Assembly: GCA_039096225.1 (NCBI GenBank)
Contig: JBBPEB010000015.1
Coordinates: 2,046,001-2,110,000 of the forward strand
Source: Blastocystis sp. Blastoise
Lineage: Eukaryota > Protista > Bigyra: Opalinata
Length of the DNA stretch: 64,000 bases
Direction: 5' to 3'
The translations under genes were made by a program, and so were the position numbers. The notes under the pieces were generated by a model. That model was not told the DNA's origin. It made no database searches and saw nothing but the letters and a program-made list of their open reading frames with translations. Positions 11,175-52,200 of this stretch are shown piece by piece (position 1 is the stretch's first letter; every line of letters begins with the position of its first letter).

Positions 11175-11688
11175 GTTAGAATAATTCAAAAGAAGAGTAT
11201 CTGTAAGTATTTATCTTTTATGAAAGAATAATAAATTCAAATTTTGTAAACTCTATCAAAAATAGATTCTTTTTCTGAATTCATCCAATTAACCAGGTTT
11301 ATTATTAAAAAACAACTAGTAAACTGGATGTTTTTCATGATTATATCTTTTGGATACAGTTCAAAAGAACATTCGTTAATTCATTAAACAAATAAAAAAC
11401 TGAAGTATTTTAAGAATAAATAAGTAAAAATTTGTTTTTCCTTTTTCTTAATAGAAAATTCAGAAAAAAAGTGCATTGTTCTGTGTATTAGACAAAAAAA
11501 TGAGAAGAAATTTTTACTTCAATAAAAAATATGGCTTATTTCATTTTTTTGCTAGAAAAATAGAAATTTCTATGAAAGTATATGGAAATTATTTTTAATT
11601 AAATTGAGTAGAGAAGTTCATTGTGTTTCTATTCTGAGGTCTCAGAAATACGTTGTTGAGTTTGAATAACTGAATTTATGAAATAACA

Positions 11689-43700: not shown

Positions 43701-45539
43701 TAAGGAATCATCAACTTCATCTAAAGATAAGAAGTGATTAATACGTTTTAAAGAAACATTAAATTGAATAAACATCATAAGACACATAGGTAACATCATA
43801 AAAGGTACACGAATAATTTCAAATAGATTTAATGAAGTAAATACAACAGAAGGAGTAAGAGGTTGATTCATAGCAGAAGGATATAAAGCAAATATAATAA
43901 AAGGTATTAAATAAGGAACAATTTGTAATACTACATCAAAACCAAGTGTCATTAACCAACTCATATTCGCTACTTGTTTTAATTCTTTTTCACGAACTTC
44001 ACTTACTTTACCTAAGAAAGGTCTTTCCCAACAATAATACTTAATTACACGAATACCTATATATAGGAGATATATATATTATATTTATATGTAAAATATT
44101 TATAAGTTGAATATAAATAATAATAATAATAGAAAATAATAAATAAATAATAATAAATAAATAAATAAATAATAATAATGATAATAAAAAAAATAATATT
44201 AAAAAAATAATAATAAGTAAATAAAATAAAACAATATATATATACCCATAAGAACTTCATTTAATAATTTAACTCTTTCATCAGTACATTTCATATTACG
44301 TTCTCTGAATTTTCTTGCATAGACAGTACAGAATATTTGTACAATGAGCATAATCACTAAAATACCAATAACAACAGAAGTTAACCATCCAATTAATTGA
44401 GCAAGAAGTACAATAGCTACTACAAGCATAATAGGTACACTAATTGTCATAAGAATAACAGCAGCAAACATTTGTAACATATTAGTATCTGAACTCATAA
44501 TATTCACTAATTGACCAGTAGAAGTATTTCCTTTAGCTGTAGATGTTAAATATAATGCTTTTCTATAAACAGCTTCAGAAGCCATTGATTTCATTTGAAC
44601 ACCTATTCTTGTCATAATCATTTGAGCACTAGTACTTAAATATGAATTAATTACAGGAAGAACAAATAATAAAACAGTATATGTCCAACGAGTAGCATCA
44701 TTCAAATATTCTTCTTCACCTGTATATTCTAAATCTGTAACTAATTCCTTTAAAATTAATGTAGGAACAAAACCAATAATAATACCAATTATAAAAGCTA
44801 CAAAAGGCCATATCCTATAGAGATGTTTTTGTTATATATGTATTTTAAATTTATATATATAATAAATATAAATATATATAAATATATAAAATTATATATA
44901 AATATATATAAATATATAAAATTATATATAAATATATATAAAATTATATATAAATATATAAAAATAATATAAAATAAACTACATACCAATTCCAAATACC
45001 AGTAGCTTTAACAACAGATCCAAAAAGAGAACGTTTATCAGCAGGTTTAGAATCTTCTAATTTATAATATGATTCGAATTTATTGTACAGCAAAGCAGGA
45101 TCATCAGTCTTACTAGGTGCACCAAGATCTTCAGCTGTAAGAGACTTCTTCATACCACCATAAATCATCTTATCAAGGAAAAGAACCCTATAAAAAAATA
45201 TCAATGTTAGTTTTTTTTATTATCAGAATTTATTGAAATGCTATGAAATGTATATACATTGGCCATGTGAACCAGTTAGATTTACTTTCATAGTTAACTT
45301 CATTCTTTACAGGCTTTTCATCTTTAGTAGTATCATGAATATCAATATCCTATAGAAATACAATTTTAAATTCGTTGTATGCTAAGAAAATTGCTTCAAA
45401 CTTACAATATCTTTATCAGCAGGAGAGTCTAGTTTCTATAGAGATAACAAAATTAGAATTGAAAAAAATATATGCAGAAATCTTATACATTATCTGTCTC
45501 TTCATGAATAGTAGCTAATTCTATTTTTGTATCAGCCAT
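40780..45539 (-). CDS. ABCC/MRP-family ABC transporter (TMD-NBD-TMD-NBD, no TMD0)
   Basis: Walker A GRVGSGKTS and GRTGAGKSS; signatures LSGGQKAR and FSVGQRQL; IIPQDPVLF, DEATAS. Confidence 0.95.
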
Positions 45540-46212
45540 TTTTTATATAATAAAAGTTGTTCTGATAACAAATATTTTTAAAATAAAATATGATGTGATA
45601 ATTCATTCCATTTGTTTCTCTGATGAATAAATTCAGTATTCGAAAGAACTCTAACAACAATGACAGAGAACGCGTATAACAAATTTAGAAGTTCGTTTCG
45701 AAAAATAGAATGTTCGAATTTGAAAAAAGAACTCGAATAGAACTCCTTAAGTATGCTTTTTAATGTGTGATTTATAACCTCTCCTTTTGTTTCTTCTGTC
45801 TCTCCATATATTTTTTGAAAAGATCCATTGGTTCTCCTTTTTTAACCATTCATTTCAGAAAAGAGTTGGTTCTCTATTATTCTTTCGAATTAATCATACT
45901 TTATTTAGTATTTTTCTTCACTATTTTTGCTTCTTTTGTGTAATAGAGTCATTTCATAAGGAATGAAATATAAGAAATAGTGAATGAATTTTAATTAGAC
46001 TGATTTACATGATTTTATATTGTGAATTATACATGTGTGCGTGTAGTTTTTATGAATTATGTTGTTAAATATCATTTTAAAAGAAGAGAGTATATGGTAA
46101 TTCACATTAAAAAAAAATAATAGTAACAATAACAACATAAATTAAAAAGGAGAATATTTTATAAAATGCATGAATAATGAGCATTTTAAATGAAACAGTA
46201 AGTAATCACTGT

Positions 46213-47154
46213 TTAAGGAATAATTTCGATACTGTTGTTGTAGGTAGGATAATGGAAATCTTCAAGAGTAAGAACACCTTTTTGAATTAATTCTTGAATC
46301 TATACAATATATGTATAATAAGTTAATAAAAATAATATATCAATATACTTCAGGTAAGATATCTCTTAATTCTTTGATTAAATGCTTAACAGTAAAAAAT
46401 AATTAAGAAAAAAAGATATTTTTTTTATATTTCTAATAGTAATAAAAATATATATAAAAGATATGTGACACAGACTTCATCAAAACCTTGATCACCCCAC
46501 CATTTATTTTCATTAGCATATAAGCAACGACCACCACAATCACCAAATATTTCACAAGAAGTACATGGTTCACCAATCTTACTTATATTACGAATATGTT
46601 CAGGATCAAAATCTATATATATTTATATAAATATGTAAATAAATAAATATATAAATTAAAAATAATAAATAATTATAATTATATATATACGATCAGTTAA
46701 TTGAGAAACACATTCAACTTCAGCAGCAATAGGACAAGTAGATATATGACCTCCAGTAGTAATATTAAAAGAAGTAAGACCACTAGCACAACGAACACCA
46801 GTAACTTTTTCACCTTTTAACATAGTCCATAAACATCCAGTAAAAGGAGCGATAGGAAGAACTTTTCCAGTACGAGCTTCTTTAATGAATTCAGCAACAA
46901 GCTTAGTAATACCTTTATTTATATATATATAATATACATATATATAATATTTATATTTAAAATAGAATAAAAAAAAATAAAATAAAAAAAAAATAAAAAA
47001 TTAAAAAAATATGATAAAAAATATATATACCAGGATTATAGTTGTTATCTCTCCATTCAGTCCATCCCTTCATACGTTCACTATCGGGAGTATCCCAAAG
47101 AGCATCTATTTGCCAATGAACATGATCAAAACCATTATTTACCAAATCTATATT

Positions 47155-47186
<32 letters not shown>

Positions 47187-48246
47187 TATTAACTTGAGAG
47201 TAAATAAAAACAAAATGTAATTTAAAAAATAATACATATATATATTAAAATAAATAAAATACACATGACATCGTCATAAATATGTCCTTTTTGTTCAATA
47301 GAAACAGTCATTCTAGCAACAATATCTCCTTTATATCCTCTTTCTTTTATTAACTTGACATTATTCATAATCTTCTTATGAGTACCTTTACCTCTACAAT
47401 TATAAAATAAATATAATAAATAAAAATATAATAAATAAAAATAATAAATAAAAATATAATTAATAAAAATATAATTAATAAAAATATAATAAATAAAAAT
47501 ATAATTAATAAAAATATAATTAATAAAAACATAATAAATAAAAATATAATAAATAAAAATATAATAAATAAAAACATAATAAATAAAAACATAATACATA
47601 AAAATATAATAAATAAAAACATAATAATAAATATAATATATACCTCTACATCTATCAGTAGTTTCTTCAGTACCATCAATAGAACATAAAATAGTATCTA
47701 CTTTTAATAAATATTCAGGTTTTACGGTATGTAAAAGAGTAGCATTGGTTTGGAATATGAATTTAGCATTAGGAATCATATCCATAACTTTATAAATGAC
47801 TCTTGTCTTTAATAAAGGTTCACCACCATAAAAACAAATAGCTAAATCATCTTTAACTAATTTAAATTATATTAAAGATTCTAAAATGTGAGCAAAAAGT
47901 AATAATTATTCATAATAGTAATAATTTAGTATAATAATAGAAACAAATAAATTTTTTAAGGATATTTTAATTTCTCAATTAACTTAAGATCATAACTAAT
48001 CTCTTTAGGATGAGTATCAAGCTCATATTGTTCAACCTAAACCAAAAATAAAAAAATAAACATATATATTTAGTAAATTTTGAAAAATAATATAAAGTAC
48101 ATACAGAGATATCTTCTAAATCATCATAATTCTCATCAGAACCACAATAGGTACAAGTCAAATTACAATTCTAAGTATAAAAACATAGTCATTAAGATAG
48201 TCATGATTAATATATATACTTGAGTTAATGTTAGGAAGAATAACAT
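46213..48246 (-). CDS. Radical SAM/SPASM-domain enzyme resembling the archaeal AF0577-type family, about 10 exons
   Basis: CNLTCTYC (CxxxCxxC), FYGGEP, QTNA, SIDG..TD..RG, ARMTVS, HVHWQID, SPASM cysteines RCASG..CPIA..CTSCEIFGDCGGRC, end YNNSIEIIP*. The family assignment is from memory. Confidence 0.85.
46392..46464 (-). other. U12-type AT-AC intron in radical SAM gene (73 nt, phase 2)
   Basis: 5' ATATCTTTT; 3' TTTCTTAATTATTTTTTAC; removal gives GFDEVCV-T-VKHLI. Confidence 0.88.
47862..47965 (-). other. U12-type intron in radical SAM gene, probably AT-AA (104 nt, phase 2)
   Basis: Perfect 5' ATATCCTT; branch-like TCTTTAAT 10 nt before an AA that restores the frame IEKL-K-LVKDDLAICFYGGEP. 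The nearby AG gives an immediate stop. Confidence 0.75.
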
Positions 48247-49280
48247 TAGTTAAAGATGGAAGAAAAGGATAAAAATAAATAAAAATGCTATTTCTTTACT
48301 ACTGGTTCATAAGAATTACGAAAAAGACAAAAGTATGACTCCAAAACAAAATTTATTTAGGAATATTTTTATATTCTTATTTACTTGTTAAATTAGGACT
48401 AATATCAAAGTTATTATTGTCAGAGGAGTAGTTTTCATTCTTTACAAGGTATATCATCTAGAAATTATATTAGAATGCTTAAATTCATGATTTCGTAAAA
48501 ATGAAAAGATTAGAGATCATCATAAATTGCTTTCAATATGAGAATTGCTAATATTTAATCTGGTAAGTCTATATGAATAAATGTGAGCATTATACGACAG
48601 TATTTCACTCTTGTATCTTCTTATTCTATAGATATTTCTTTTCTATGCTGTATAGTATAAAAGAAAAATTCTAAATAATATAGAATTATTGTTGATATGA
48701 AAGAATATATATATTCTTGTTCAAAAATTATTCATCTTAAAATGTATTTGGAAATAATTTGGTTTTTCAGGTTCTATATTGCTATACAGAATCTTCTATA
48801 CTTAAAATATCAATAAAAAGTCAATTTCTATAGAATGAAAAATAGATTGAATCTATTAGGAAGATACTCGAGGTTTCATAACTGAATGCATATTATAATC
48901 ATTCACCTAATATTTTTAATTTCAAGCCATTTCGATATGTCAATTTCAATTCTTTAAAAAAGAATCAACTGTTAAATAAAGAGCACAATTAAACAAATTC
49001 AACGAAAATATCTGAAAATAATAAATTTTCGGTGATGTTTGACTGGATTCTCTTGGGAATTTCAAACCTATAGAACGTAAGAAAAAAATGGAAACTTGCT
49101 CATATAGCCACTTATCTATAAGGTTTCAGATTTTCTTGAGATTGTTGTTAATTATGGGGAATGAGATATTTTTTAGAGAAAAGAAATAATTTTCCAAACA
49201 TCTATAATTTCAAGTCTTTCTGTGTTTTTGATTGTCATAAAACTGTTCTTTTCCGTTTTTAAAATGATAGATATACAACA

Positions 49281-52200
49281 ATGTTAAATATAAGTATATT
49301 GAAACAAGACAGACAAAACATACAAAAGAGTCTTCTTCGTATTATCATGAAAGATAATTATTCTGAGAATCAAATGCCATACGTGAACTTTAAAACGATG
49401 CTTGATCAATTCCCTAAAGAAGAATTATCTACTTGTGGAAGAAGATTCATGTTATATGAAATGACCTACAAATGTCAAGAGTGTAGCGTATATATTTATA
49501 TTTAGAAATAGTTTTCTGTTTTATTTTTCTTATTTTAATTATTTGAAAATATGAATATAGAAGTGAATTATTTGTCATATTCATATATATAAATATTATA
49601 GTTATCTCAGAATTGTATGCTTTGTCAAGATTGTTATGATCCTTCAAAACATATAAATCACCATGTTATTATGGTTTCTCAAAAAACTCCAGGTAAAAGT
49701 TGTTCTTGTGGAAATCCATCTCTAATTAAACAAGAACATGGATGTCCTACTCATAAACAAAAACAGTATATACATTATTATTATTATTTAATATTTATAT
49801 TTATTATTATTTTTTTTTTTGATAATATTATTTAATAATTATTATGAATCCTAGATATATATATATTTATATATATATATATTTATTATTTTTTTCTTTA
49901 TATAGAACAAGAATATATAATACATATACAGATTTTCCCAAGAATTACGTTGTGGGATTTTTGTCATTTTGCCGCCAAACTGTAGCGTTCATATATCATA
50001 CAATAGAATTATTAGATTATGTGATCGATAGAAATTTATTAAAGAAAAAAGGTATATATATAGTATTATGTATGTAGTGTAATAAGTATTATTATTTTTT
50101 TTTGCTTTATAAAATAATATATAAAAAATTTATTTACTTGAATGTATATATATTATGTAAATCTAATTATATTATATATATAGAAATTGTATATTTTTAT
50201 TTACGAAAAGATTTAATTCATTCTGATATTGAATATAAACAGTTATTATTATCTATATATGATCCGCAAGAAACAGATATATATGCAGCTTATAGAACAT
50301 TCTCCAATGATGATTATATATTATTATTAGTATATATATAAGATATACATTATTTTTATTATTATTTTTTTAAATATAAATAATATTTGTTGTTTATAAA
50401 TTATATATATATATATTCTAGAATGGAAAGTTAGGAATTATAAATAATCAGATTGATGCATTATTATCGATGGGTGAATTCTTCTTTGAATTAGATAATC
50501 AAGAGAGATATGAATATCGTCACTGTTTACCTCTCTTAATCGCGGAAATCATCGATATTGTGAAACATCATGCTTTTCTTAAAGATGCTTTTCTTACAGA
50601 AGTATATTATTATTATATTTATTATTATTATATTTATTATTATTATATTTATATTTTATTTTATTATTATTATATTTATTATTATTATATTTATATTTTA
50701 TTATATTATTATTAGATTTAGATTTAATTTTATTTATTATTATATTTATTATTATTATATTTATTATTATTATATTTATTATTAGATTTATTATTATTAG
50801 CTTTATTATTATTATATTTATTATTATTATATTTATATTTAATTTAATTTTATTATTATTATATTTATATTTTTTTTTATTATTATTATATTTATCATTA
50901 AACTTATTATATTTATCATTCAACTTATTATTCTTATCCATTAAAATTATTACACTTATAAATCTATACCCTAGTTATTAAAGCCTATATATAAGCCACA
51001 TACTTCAATGTCTACATTCCAATTAATTCTTCGAAAATGTCATCTTTTATTTCCAAATACTATTGATTTATTTGATAATTTATTTCAATGTTTAATACAA
51101 AATATTTCTCAAGAAAATATTAATTATATAACAAACCAATATATTCGTGAATATTCTTCAATTCAATACAGTAGAACGATGAGTCCCGTGAATAAATTAT
51201 CACAAGGTTTTTATTTATTAAGTGATCAATTGTTCTTATATCCTTATCATTCTATACAAATGAAACATCAAATATTTCAAAGTGTTTTCACAGATTTTAA
51301 TGTATATTATTATTATATTTATTTTTTTTAATTTATTTATTGAACTATTTTTATTCTATATAATATATATATTTAGAACAATATATTAACTGTGATATTT
51401 CCACTTTTATTTCCTTATTTACGTTCTCAACCACCAACGGTTCCCGCGTTTTTAGATACTAAATGGAGTTCTATTTATTAGTATATATATATTAATAATT
51501 ATTCATTGTTATTATTATATAGTGATTTAGAATTATTATTAGATAGCAATTTATATGATGATATTATATATTCAGATAAAGAATATACATTACAATTCAT
51601 TACTTGTCTTTCTATGCTTGAAGTATATTATATTCTATTTTTTTAATTATTTAATTTATATATTTTTATTCTATTATTCTATTTATATATTTTTATTCTA
51701 TTTATTCTATTTATATATTTTTATCGATTATTCTATTTATATCTATTTATTCTATTTATATATATATTATTCTATATATTATATATAAAGGGAGGAGATT
51801 CGTTACATCCTGATAATATTAATAATTTAGATATTCAGAGTTCATTCCCACGGGAAATTATGGATAGTATTAATCGTATTACTTTTAAATGGGGTATATA
51901 TATATATATATATAAATTTCTATATATATGTTTTTAATAGTTATCCACATTATATATATATATATATAATATATAATATTTTTTAGTTCATAAGGCATTT
52001 AATCTCCTTCCTATTACTTCTCTTCTATATATTGTAAAAGAATCATCAAAATTATTAAAGAATATTTTAGAAAGTCGTTCTTTTTATCATATAGAACGAT
52101 ATAATATTATATATAAAGATATTCAATATGATTTCTTCTTTACTCTTCCTTATTATTCTTTATATATACCTTTAACTTCATTTATATCTACACTTGTTAT

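What the first reader, a model, noticed from the sequence alone, without database searches (positions are those of the whole stretch)
46392..47965. Two U12 introns (AT-AC and AT-AA) inside a prokaryote-type radical SAM gene: evidence for de novo minor intron creation
Seen: 46392-46464 (ATATCTTT..TTCTTAAT..AC) and 47862-47965 (ATATCCTT..TCTTTAAT..AA) interrupt the radical SAM/SPASM gene. Inference: if the gene came from archaea by lateral transfer it arrived without introns, so these minor introns cannot be inherited from the last eukaryotic common ancestor. New U12 intron gain is well documented in very few lineages (Physarum is the main case). With NAGLU this gives 5 U12 introns among my rough count of about 150 introns, none of them GT-AG and confined to two genes.
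Basis: partly seen in the sequence, partly recalled or inferred. Interest (0 to 1): 0.9.

Follow-up and report, generated by a model that had tools for sequence, protein, structure and literature searches.

The report
Two real U12 introns, Blastocystis gene
Both stretches are genuine minor-spliceosome (U12-type) introns in a radical SAM gene of a tortoise-gut Blastocystis, and relatives carry ordinary introns or none at the same sites, so minor introns are still being made or switched in this lineage.

Summary
On the minus strand a 10-exon, 375-codon gene (48246-46213) of the TIGR04084 (AF0577) radical SAM/SPASM family has seven GT-AG introns plus two others. One is 47965-47862 (ATATCCTT, TCTTTAAT box, AT-AA). 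The other is 46464-46392 (ATATCTTT, TTCTTAAT box, AT-AC). No GT-AG alternative keeps the homologous peptide. The genome encodes U11, U12 and U6atac.

The genome matches Blastocystis sp. Rus-B, a tortoise isolate (33.3 Mb, 23% GC). A sister lineage has the same AT-AA intron at the same site, and an intron-less contig of it shows exactly that junction.

The gene is not a direct archaeal transfer. It sits in a eukaryote-only clade of anaerobes (support 100/99), and its relation to Asgard archaea is unresolved. However, none of its intron positions is shared outside the Blastocystis clade.

- The first intron's site holds a 30-nt GT-AG intron in all human subtypes and in an outgroup.
- The second intron is absent from all 11 relatives' loci examined.
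- Two further sites are U12-type in other lineages and GT-AG here.

So U12 introns arose or switched type within Blastocystis. Blastocystis was already known to be rich in minor introns, so this is a new member of a known kind. No RNA was laid on this window.

The parts
48220..48246 (-). Exon 1 (ATG at 48246; MLFFLTLTQ)
   Evidence: Same N-terminus in P0004, P0005 and L009. GTATAT donor. The frame joins exon 2.
48171..48219 (-). Intron 1, GT-AG, 49 nt, phase 0
   Evidence: The position is shared with L009, L012 and L019.
48105..48170 (-). Exon 2, with the CxxxCxxC radical SAM cluster motif (NCNLTCTYC)
48037..48104 (-). Intron 2, GT-AG, 68 nt, phase 0. The same site holds an ATATCCTTT.. U12-like intron in outgroup locus L022.
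47966..48036 (-). Exon 3
   Evidence: It carries a 7-residue insertion specific to the Blastocystis clade.
47862..47965 (-). Intron A: U12-type, AT-AA, 104 nt, phase 2. 5' end ATATCCTT. The TCTTTAAT box ends 9 nt before the 3' end.
   Evidence: The same site and the same AT-AA ends occur in L009 and L015. Intron-less contig L023 shows the junction. All human-type subtypes and L022 have GT-AG at this site.
47644..47861 (-). Exon 4 (GGEPLL region)
   Evidence: 67.4 bits to TIGR04084.
47392..47643 (-). Intron 4, GT-AG, 252 nt, phase 1, 4% GC. It is full of tandem repeats and TGTAGAGGTA stands at both ends.
47263..47391 (-). Exon 5
47148..47262 (-). Intron 5, GT-AG, 115 nt, phase 1. The same site holds an ATATCC..AC U12-type intron in four human-type Blastocystis lineages.
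47031..47147 (-). Exon 6
46913..47030 (-). Intron 6, GT-AG, 118 nt, phase 1
   Evidence: Shared with L009.
46691..46912 (-). Exon 7
46613..46690 (-). Intron 7, GT-AG, 78 nt, phase 1
   Evidence: Shared with L012 and L019.
46465..46612 (-). Exon 8 (SPASM cysteines, CGGRC)
   Evidence: TIGR04084 44.7 bits; TIGR04085 19.2 bits.
46392..46464 (-). Intron B: U12-type, AT-AC, 73 nt, phase 2. 5' end ATATCTTT. The TTCTTAAT box ends 10 nt before the 3' end.
   Evidence: This region has no intron in all 11 relatives' loci that cover it. The peptide runs without a gap across the junction in sister P0214 and in all homologues.
46349..46391 (-). Exon 9, a 43-nt mini-exon (VKHLIKELRDILPE)
   Evidence: 12 of 14 residues are identical to sister P0214. 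It needs intron B to be removed.
46300..46348 (-). Intron 9, GT-AG, 49 nt, phase 0. Among the loci compared it is seen only in the window; the 3' half of the sister's genomic locus was not found.
46213..46299 (-). Exon 10 with a TAA stop (..YNNSIEIIP)

Best explanation
Both stretches are genuine U12-type introns of one expressed-looking gene. The gene is the orthologue of a TIGR04084 (AF0577-type) radical SAM/SPASM enzyme in a tortoise-associated Blastocystis.

How they work (inferred from the established minor-splicing pathway):
- The genome's own U11 (5' AUAAAGGG) pairs with the ATATCC / ATATCT 5' site.
- Its U12 (GAGUAAGGAAA, canonical) pairs with the TCTTTAAT / TTCTTAAT box. The C-to-T changes are tolerated as G.U pairs.
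- The 3' cut is set by distance, 10-12 nt past the branch A, rather than by an AG. That is why AA and AC ends both work.

How they came to be:
- The gene belongs to a eukaryote-only clade of anaerobes and has archaeal-type ancestry.
- All of its introns are confined to the Blastocystis clade.
- Within that clade four sites (intron 2, A, intron 5, B) are U12-type in some lineages and GT-AG or absent in others.
- So the U12 introns were born, or switched type, inside this lineage long after the last eukaryotic common ancestor.
- At site A parsimony favours a U2-to-U12 switch on the tortoise-side branch.
- B was either gained on that branch or lost in the human-subtype stem.

Shown here: the motifs, the reading frame, the snRNA genes, the shared and unshared positions, and the sister-lineage junction. 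Inferred: actual U12-dependent splicing in this organism, and the direction of the changes.
For: - Motifs and frame.
- No GT-AG alternative keeps the homologous peptide.
- Chance of the motifs at fixed boundaries is about 1e-6.
- snRNA genes in the same genome: U11 62.9 bits, U6atac 63.8 bits, both above Rfam cut-offs, and a full-length U12 at 46.8 bits with the canonical branch-pairing box.
- Sister lineage L009/L015 (87.7% protein identity) has ATATCCTTT..TTCTTAAT..(9 nt)..AA at the same codon position.
- Intron-less contig L023 reads ..CTCAA|GCTTGT.., exactly that junction.
- Site A is a 27-28-nt-extra GT-AG intron in every human-type locus and in L022.
- The intron 5 site is ATATCC..AC in L012/L031/L033, L019, L026/L030 and L027/L028. 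Proteins P0199 and P0209, from contigs too short to hold the introns, read through the junction as predicted.
- The B region is exactly 111 nt with no intron in 11 loci.
- Pelomyxa, Cirrosporium and Anaeramoeba share no intron position.
- Careful tree: eukaryote clade 100/99; Blastocystis clade including L022 98/97; window plus sister 100/98.
Against: - Junctions 47966|47861 and 46465|46391 rest on homology. For A they also rest on a sister-lineage contig.
- U4atac was not found, and U12 scores below Rfam's cut-off.
- Intron B has only 7 of 8 matches at the 5' site. Both branch boxes have 6 of 8 matches.
- Outgroup L022 keeps only 5' introns. That is the pattern of reverse-transcriptase-mediated loss, so it says little about whether B is ancestral.
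- The sister lineage's 3' half was not recovered as genomic DNA.
- Only three other eukaryotic homologues could be read as genomic DNA with known structure.
Confidence: 0.72

Rival explanations
1. One reading: the gene was transferred directly from an archaeon into this lineage without introns, and both U12 introns were inserted afterwards.
For: The family is a prokaryote-type NCBIfam family. The nearest named prokaryotes are Asgard and Bathyarchaeota. No named hit comes from an aerobic stramenopile.
Against: The Blastocystis sequences are nested in a eukaryote-only clade with Euglena, Anaeramoeba, Entamoeba, Pelomyxa, Neocallimastigomycota and Tritrichomonas at 100/99 support. They are not next to any archaeon.
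Confidence: 0.08
2. The introns are old. The gene was in the last eukaryotic common ancestor (from the Asgard-related host) or came from a eukaryotic donor, already carrying U12 introns at these sites. Other lineages lost them or converted them to U2-type.
For: The eukaryotic distribution is broad and the clade is monophyletic, with Asgard relatives. U12-to-U2 conversion and intron loss are the classical directions of change. Blastocystis subtypes clearly lose introns: L021/L029 lack two.
Against: No intron position is shared with Pelomyxa (4 introns), Cirrosporium (1), Anaeramoeba (0) or the P0004 contig (0). It would also need four U12-type sites among about 12 in one ancestral gene, although minor introns are about 1% of Blastocystis introns (PMC5608401).
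Confidence: 0.1
3. They are not spliced by the minor spliceosome. Either they are U2-type AT-AC introns, or the gene model is wrong: a pseudogene, or a single long GT-AG intron 46469-46300 that skips the mini-exon.
For: There is no RNA evidence from this organism. A GT-AG pair 46469-46300 keeps the frame. ATATCTTT is a common word in a 22% GC genome, with 29 copies in the window.
Against: That alternative deletes 17 residues that are conserved in every homologue. The skipped mini-exon still encodes 12 of 14 residues of the sister protein although it lies between two introns of 8% and 12% GC. At A no GT-AG solution keeps the peptide. The 5' sites match the U12 consensus, not the U2-type AT-AC consensus. 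The same AT-AA excision is seen in a sister lineage's intron-less contig.
Confidence: 0.05

Closest known systems
U12-type introns of Blastocystis ST1/ST7 (Gentekaki et al. 2017, PMC5608401; Larue and Roy 2023, PMC10639083)
   Same: The same genus by all signs. Mostly AT-AC ends and none of the GTATCC type, all four snRNAs reported, fast turnover between subtypes, and authors who suspected recent gain.
   Different: These two introns lie in a tortoise-clade genome (PMC12129017) whose paper does not mention U12. They are 73-104 nt instead of about 40. One is AT-AA. Here the change of type at orthologous sites is seen directly within one gene.
Minor-intron expansion in Physarum polycephalum (bioRxiv 10.1101/2020.10.12.336362)
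   Same: Lineage-specific creation of U12-type introns after the last eukaryotic common ancestor.
   Different: From my own knowledge of that work, Physarum has tens of thousands of such introns with transformed signals. Here the number is probably hundreds, and the signals are near-canonical. I found 3 unverified candidates in 150 kb of sampled genome.
AT-AA subclass of U12-type introns in animals and plants (PMC10639083, section on non-canonical termini)
   Same: AT-AA is the commonest non-canonical minor-intron end. The 3' site is chosen by distance from the branch box.
   Different: Here AT-AA is conserved between two lineages whose third-codon-position GC content differs fourfold (0.15 against 0.64).
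U12-to-U2 intron conversion (Burge et al. 1998; cited from my own knowledge)
   Same: Orthologous sites hold U12-type introns in one lineage and U2-type in another.
   Different: At site A the outgroup and all human subtypes are U2-type, so parsimony points the unusual way (U2 to U12). This is not proven.
TIGR04084 / AF0577 radical SAM/SPASM family
   Same: Collinear match over the whole profile, the CxxxCxxC motif, SPASM cysteines and the conserved C-terminal ..YNNS.E.IP.
   Different: This is the eukaryotic branch. The substrate is unknown, and there is a 7-residue clade-specific insertion after intron 2.

Membership tests
U12-type (minor spliceosome) intron | 5' splice site matching /[AG]TATCCTT directly at the exon boundary | tested here: met
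   A: ATATCCTT, 8 of 8. B: ATATCTTT, 7 of 8, and the change keeps a G.U pair with U11.
U12-type (minor spliceosome) intron | TCCTTAAC-like branch box close to the 3' end (branch A about 10-15 nt from it) and no long pyrimidine tract requirement | tested here: met
   A: TCTTTAAT, with the branch A's 10-11 nt from the end. B: TTCTTAAT, 11-12 nt. Both are 6 of 8, and both changes are C to T. The spacing is the same in sister L009.
U12-type (minor spliceosome) intron | Terminal dinucleotides of a recognised class (AT-AC, GT-AG, or documented non-canonical such as AT-AA) | tested here: met
   B is AT-AC. A is AT-AA, the commonest non-canonical class (PMC10639083).
U12-type (minor spliceosome) intron | Minor spliceosome snRNAs encoded in the same genome | tested here: inconclusive
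   U11 and U6atac score above Rfam cut-offs. U12 is full length at 46.8 bits against a cut-off of 53. U4atac was not detected.
U12-type (minor spliceosome) intron | Excision at these boundaries seen in RNA, and dependence on U12/U6atac | not testable with these tools
The only evidence is indirect: the sister lineage's intron-less contig L023 shows the A junction, and RNA runs hold 0.29 of the stretch's words, about the exon share.
TIGR04084 (AF0577) radical SAM/SPASM family | Whole-protein score over the curated cut-off of 225 bits | tested here: inconclusive
   The gene was scored exon by exon only. The seven collinear hits sum to 229.9 bits over profile positions 6-347. The joined protein was not sent to any search tool.
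TIGR04084 (AF0577) radical SAM/SPASM family | CxxxCxxC cluster motif and C-terminal SPASM cysteines | tested here: met
   CNLTCTYC in exon 2. CTSC..CGGRC in exon 8, with a weak TIGR04085 hit of 19.2 bits.
Laterally acquired gene (direct from archaea) | Recipient sequence nested within, or sister to, a donor prokaryotic clade with support | tested here: not met
   It is nested in a eukaryote-only clade (100/99). The relation of that clade to Asgard and Bathyarchaeota is an unresolved polytomy.
Laterally acquired gene (direct from archaea) | Absence from the recipient's close relatives (other stramenopiles) | tested here: inconclusive
   No named stramenopile other than Blastocystis-type contigs appears among the named hits.

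The most novel reading that the evidence does not exclude
In Blastocystis, U2-type and U12-type introns interconvert in both directions at orthologous sites, and new AT-AC/AT-AA introns are still being born. In this one gene four sites are U12-type in at least one lineage. Site A changed from a 30-nt GT-AG intron to an AT-AA U12 intron on the branch leading to the tortoise clade. That would make it one of the first concrete cases of major-to-minor conversion, and it would make the genus a natural system for watching the birth of minor introns.
Probability: 0.4. Interest if true: 0.8.

Novelty: new member of a known kind. Interest (0 to 1): 0.58.

Why it matters
Minor introns are usually treated as relics that are only lost or converted to the major type. 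Clear cases of gain are very few.

Larue and Roy (2023) suspected recent gain in Blastocystis and asked for comparative work within the genus. This gene gives a worked example:
- all of its introns are clade-specific;
- four sites differ in spliceosome type between lineages;
- one U12 intron, B, is so far known only from the tortoise-isolate genome.

With the eight published long-read genomes the same comparison can be run genome-wide. That would measure the rates and directions of U2/U12 switching.

The gene also shows that intron lengthening (about 30 nt to 115-252 nt) happened on the tortoise side. The genome paper left that point open.

Tried and rejected
No RNA was laid.
2. I rejected the ORF starting at 48457 as first exon. 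Its GTAAAT donor is in the wrong phase, and homologues show that the true exon 1 starts at 48246.
3. The search for homologous proteins with exon 8 and with exon 7 found nothing.
4. The search for related loci with P0214 alone found nothing. The alignment A1 gave nine human-gut Blastocystis loci but no tortoise-side locus. The 3' half of the sister lineage's gene, and therefore whether it has intron B, stays unknown.
5. A search for other copies of intron A or B in the genome, as a test of an introner-like origin, found only the introns themselves. The tool skips common words, so this is weak evidence.
6. U4atac was not found.
7. L020 seemed to have a degenerate 5' site at the intron 5 position. 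The cleaner contigs L027/L028 of the same lineage read ATATCC, so L020 has assembly errors.
A strict scan gave 8 candidates against 1 in the reversed control over 214 kb. Three were outside the window. Two of those in the window (55268 plus strand, 14618 minus strand) do not look coding, and nor does the looser-scan hit at 11343. Any genome-wide number is only a rough 'hundreds'.
9. Motif counts alone are not convincing in this AT-rich DNA: 56 observed against 32 in shuffles.
Full report
**Observation.** The gene lies on the minus strand. I read 45000-49500 on both strands and built the model in a script. It has ten exons from the ATG at 48246 to the TAA at 46215-46213, giving a 1128-nt frame of 375 codons with no internal stop. 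There are nine introns.
- Seven are GT-AG, 49-252 nt long and 4-13% GC.
- Intron A is 47965-47862 (104 nt). It starts ATATCCTTAA. Its TCTTTAAT box ends 9 nt before the last base, and it ends in AA.
- Intron B is 46464-46392 (73 nt). It starts ATATCTTTTA. Its TTCTTAAT box ends 10 nt before the last base, and it ends in AC.

Both introns are phase 2. The ORF at 48457 is not part of the gene, because its donor is in the wrong phase. The N-termini of homologues P0004, P0005 and of locus L009 settle this.

**Is it more than chance?** ATATC[CT]TT is a common word in this 22% GC DNA (45 copies on both strands), so the word alone proves nothing. The context does.
- I enumerated every GT-AG, GC-AG and AT-type pair between conserved peptide anchors.
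- At A, the only solution that gives the 20-residue peptide seen in the sister species is 47965-47862. A 2-nt slide gives the same mRNA. The GT-AG solutions delete 12-17 residues.
- At B, the framed GT-AG alternative (46469-46300) would delete 17 residues that every homologue has. It would also skip the 43-nt exon 46391-46349. That exon still encodes 12 of 14 residues of the sister protein, although it lies between two introns of 8% and 12% GC.
- From the window's own motif frequencies, a 5' motif plus a box at fixed boundaries is expected about once in a million.

**The gene.** I searched exon by exon, by reference. Seven exons hit NCBIfam TIGR04084 (the AF0577 radical SAM/SPASM family) in order, from profile position 6 to 347. 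The hits sum to 229.9 bits against a cut-off of 225. Pfam sees only weak Radical_SAM pieces. Exon 2 carries CNLTCTYC and exon 8 carries the SPASM cysteines. The gene is single-copy in the genome. I never sent the joined spliced protein to a search tool. I assembled it only inside scripts from window.fa, for local alignment and trees.

**Splicing machinery.** The window's assembly (33,340,088 bases, 34 contigs) encodes three of the four minor snRNAs.
- U11 scores 62.9 bits and U6atac 63.8 bits, both above Rfam's cut-offs.
- A full-length U12 scores 46.8 bits against a cut-off of 53.
- U4atac was not detected.

The U12 keeps the canonical GAGUAAGGAAA branch-pairing stretch, and U11 begins AUAAAGGG. 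The C-to-T changes in both boxes and in B's 5' site would therefore still pair as G.U. This last point is my inference.

**Organism.** Size, scaffold number and GC match Blastocystis sp. Rus-B from a Russian tortoise: 33 scaffolds, 33.3 Mb, 23.1% GC. This is the largest of eight genomes in PMC12129017. That paper reports long introns and retained stop codons for the tortoise clade and never mentions U12.

The relatives I found fit this. GC-rich contigs from human-gut metagenomes carry the orthologue with 30-nt introns and TGTTTGTT after the stop. One lineage (L021/L029) has no genomic stop at all, which is a Blastocystis hallmark. Notes of other first readers on this genome also say 'Blastocystis-like'. 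I treat those notes as leads only.

**Relatives and transcript-like evidence.** A phmmer search with exon 4 led to several loci.
- **L009/L015** are faecal-metagenome contigs of about 46% coding GC, with 87.7% protein identity to the window over 227 residues. They share the window's first seven intron positions, with introns of about 30 to 73 nt. At site A both read ATATCCTTT..TTCTTAAT, then 9 nt, then AA. That is again AT-AA with the same spacing, even though the intron sequence has otherwise diverged.
- **L023** (protein P0214, 375 residues) is an 1181-nt contig with no introns, from the same lineage. Its first 50 aligned bases are identical to L009. It reads ..CTCAA|GCTTGT.. across site A, exactly the predicted junction. 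It is most likely transcript-derived.
- **P0199 and P0209**, full-length proteins from contigs too short to hold the introns, read through the predicted AT-AC junction at the intron 5 site of the human-type lineages.

For the window itself there is only indirect support. Two RNA-type runs hold 0.29 of the sampled words of 46100-48500. That is about the exon share (31-mers lying wholly within coding exons are about 35% of the total), not the near-100% expected of genomic DNA.

**Intron sites across lineages**, in window codon numbering.

| Site | Window and L009 | Human-type lineages | Outgroup L022 |
|---|---|---|---|
| Intron 2 (31, phase 0) | GT-AG | GT-AG | ATATCCTTTTT.., U12-like |
| A (54, phase 2) | AT-AA, U12-type | GT-AG, about 30 nt, in all five lineages | GT-AG |
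| Intron 5 (170, phase 1) | GT-AG | ATATCC..AC in four lineages; absent in L021/L029 | absent |
| B (332, phase 2) and 347, phase 0 | present in the window; L009 unknown | no intron | no intron |

- For B and 347, the anchor-to-anchor distance is exactly 111 nt, with no intron, in all 11 other loci that cover the region.
- The four human-type lineages with ATATCC..AC at intron 5 are L012/L031/L033, L019, L026/L030 and L027/L028.
- Other GT-AG sites are shared or private in a patchwork. Codons 127 and 209 occur only in the window and L009. Codons 237 and 257 occur only in human types. Codon 91 is in L009 and human types but not in the window.

Outside the clade, no position coincides. Pelomyxa schiedti has four introns at other places, Cirrosporium has one, and Anaeramoeba ignava and the P0004 contig have none.

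**Origin of the gene.** A full-length homologue search and cluster look-ups name these eukaryotes: Entamoeba (three species), Pelomyxa, Anaeramoeba, Tritrichomonas, Neocallimastigomycota, Cirrosporium, Euglena, Carpediemonas, Trepomonas, Ergobibamus and Barthelona. Among prokaryotes they name mostly Asgard archaea, plus Bathyarchaeota and one Leptospiraceae.

I built a careful IQ-TREE tree (LG+C20, 72 rows). It gives:
- a eukaryote-only clade at 100/99 that holds the Blastocystis group (98/97 including L022);
- window plus sister at 100/98;
- human subtypes at 100/100.

The fornicates group apart, with a bacterium. The relation of the eukaryote clade to Asgard and other archaea is an unresolved polytomy.

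The gene is either an old archaeal-type eukaryotic gene kept by anaerobes, or one passed among them. If the donor was a eukaryote, 'arrived without introns' is not guaranteed. The comparison of positions argues that the introns are nevertheless clade-specific.

**What the pattern means.** Four sites of one gene are U12-type in at least one Blastocystis-clade lineage, and none is shared outside the clade.
- If only the classical U12-to-U2 direction is allowed, the ancestral gene had three or four U12 introns among about a dozen. Minor introns are about 1% of Blastocystis introns (346 in ST1, PMC5608401), so that is very unlikely by chance.
- If both directions are allowed, site A needs one U2-to-U12 change on the tortoise-side branch, against two parallel changes the other way.
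- B is a gain on that branch, or a loss in the human-subtype stem.

L022 cannot decide B. It keeps only its 5' introns, which is the pattern left by reverse-transcript-mediated loss. On every reading, U12-type introns were created within this lineage.

**Known or new.** Blastocystis ST1 was reported to hold 346 U12-type introns (PMC5608401). A re-count gave 253. Of those, 77% are AT-AC, they are unusually often phase 0, and 11 of 12 aligned minor introns are lost between ST1 and B. hominis. The authors note that they may be recently gained and that more genomes are needed (PMC10639083). AT-AA is the commonest non-canonical minor-intron end.

The phenomenon is therefore known, and these are new members of it. 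Three things were not found in the papers I searched:
- U12 introns in the tortoise clade;
- a change of type at orthologous sites within one gene;
- their presence in a gene whose introns are all clade-specific.

**Limits.**
- The look-up caps for encoding contigs, homologue searches and genome letters were reached. So the sister lineage's 3' half, more eukaryotic gene structures and a genome-wide count are missing.
- A strict motif scan of 214 kb gave 8 candidates against 1 in a reversed control, with none of the GTATCC type. Two of the window's candidates do not look coding. I claim no more than 'probably hundreds genome-wide'.

Noticed in passing
window 46300-48219 against L009:226-1134: At the same intron sites the sister lineage has introns of 31-33 nt where the window has 115-252 nt of 4-8% GC. 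Third-codon-position GC is 0.64 in the sister against 0.15 in the window. With short introns also in L022 and in the human subtypes, intron lengthening and GC loss happened on the tortoise side. The genome paper (PMC12129017) left that point open.
   Followed up: partly
window 47392-47643 (-): Intron 4 has the same 10-mer, TGTAGAGGTA, at its donor and just before its acceptor, so the boundary can slide. Its inside is a run of imperfect tandem repeats of about 20 nt. It looks like a target-site-type duplication.
   Followed up: no
L002:1501-1617 (G000:C21:544821-544937, -): U6atac of this genome reads ..UUGAGCCGAGAGAAGG.. where the Rfam consensus has ..AUGAAAGGAGAGAAGG... The AAGG just upstream of the AGAGA box, which I recall as pairing with the CCUU of the 5' splice site, is replaced.
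   Followed up: no
G000 whole genome: The Rfam model found no U4atac, while U11, U12 and U6atac are present. It is either very divergent or missed by the first-look filter.
   Followed up: partly
L021:1620-1660 and L029: This human-type Blastocystis lineage has no genomic stop codon in the orthologue (..ATTCCTTGG.. followed by TGTTTGTTTG). That is the polyadenylation-made stop known from ST1/ST7. The window, L009, L012, L019 and L020 have encoded stops.
   Followed up: partly
L022:1-1150: An AT-rich outgroup lineage (Logan contig, protein P0233) keeps introns only near the 5' end of the gene and has a continuous reading frame from codon 56 to the stop. That is the pattern expected from loss through reverse-transcribed mRNA. 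Its intron at the intron 2 site starts ATATCCTTTTT and probably ends in AA.
   Followed up: partly
window 48015-48036 (exon 3 start) and homologues: All Blastocystis-clade proteins, including L022, have a 7-residue insertion (VEQYELD / IDEYERD / PEEYAEE) directly after the intron 2 site. Every other eukaryotic and archaeal homologue lacks it. It may be former intron sequence turned into exon.
   Followed up: no
family level (P0004, P0020, P0042, P0068, P0188, P0198-P0208, P0249): The TIGR04084 radical SAM/SPASM gene forms a well-supported eukaryote-only clade. It spans Amoebozoa, Metamonada, anaerobic fungi, Euglena and Blastocystis, with Asgard archaea among the nearest prokaryotes. It has no known substrate. 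It is a candidate 'anaerobe toolkit' gene worth a study of its own.
   Followed up: partly
L012:2838-2868 and L009:657-689: There are GC-AG introns of 31-33 nt at sites where other lineages have GT-AG (or, at the second site, where the window has no intron). So the first two bases of the intron also vary at orthologous sites in this clade.
   Followed up: no
I did not check the other two.
   Followed up: partly
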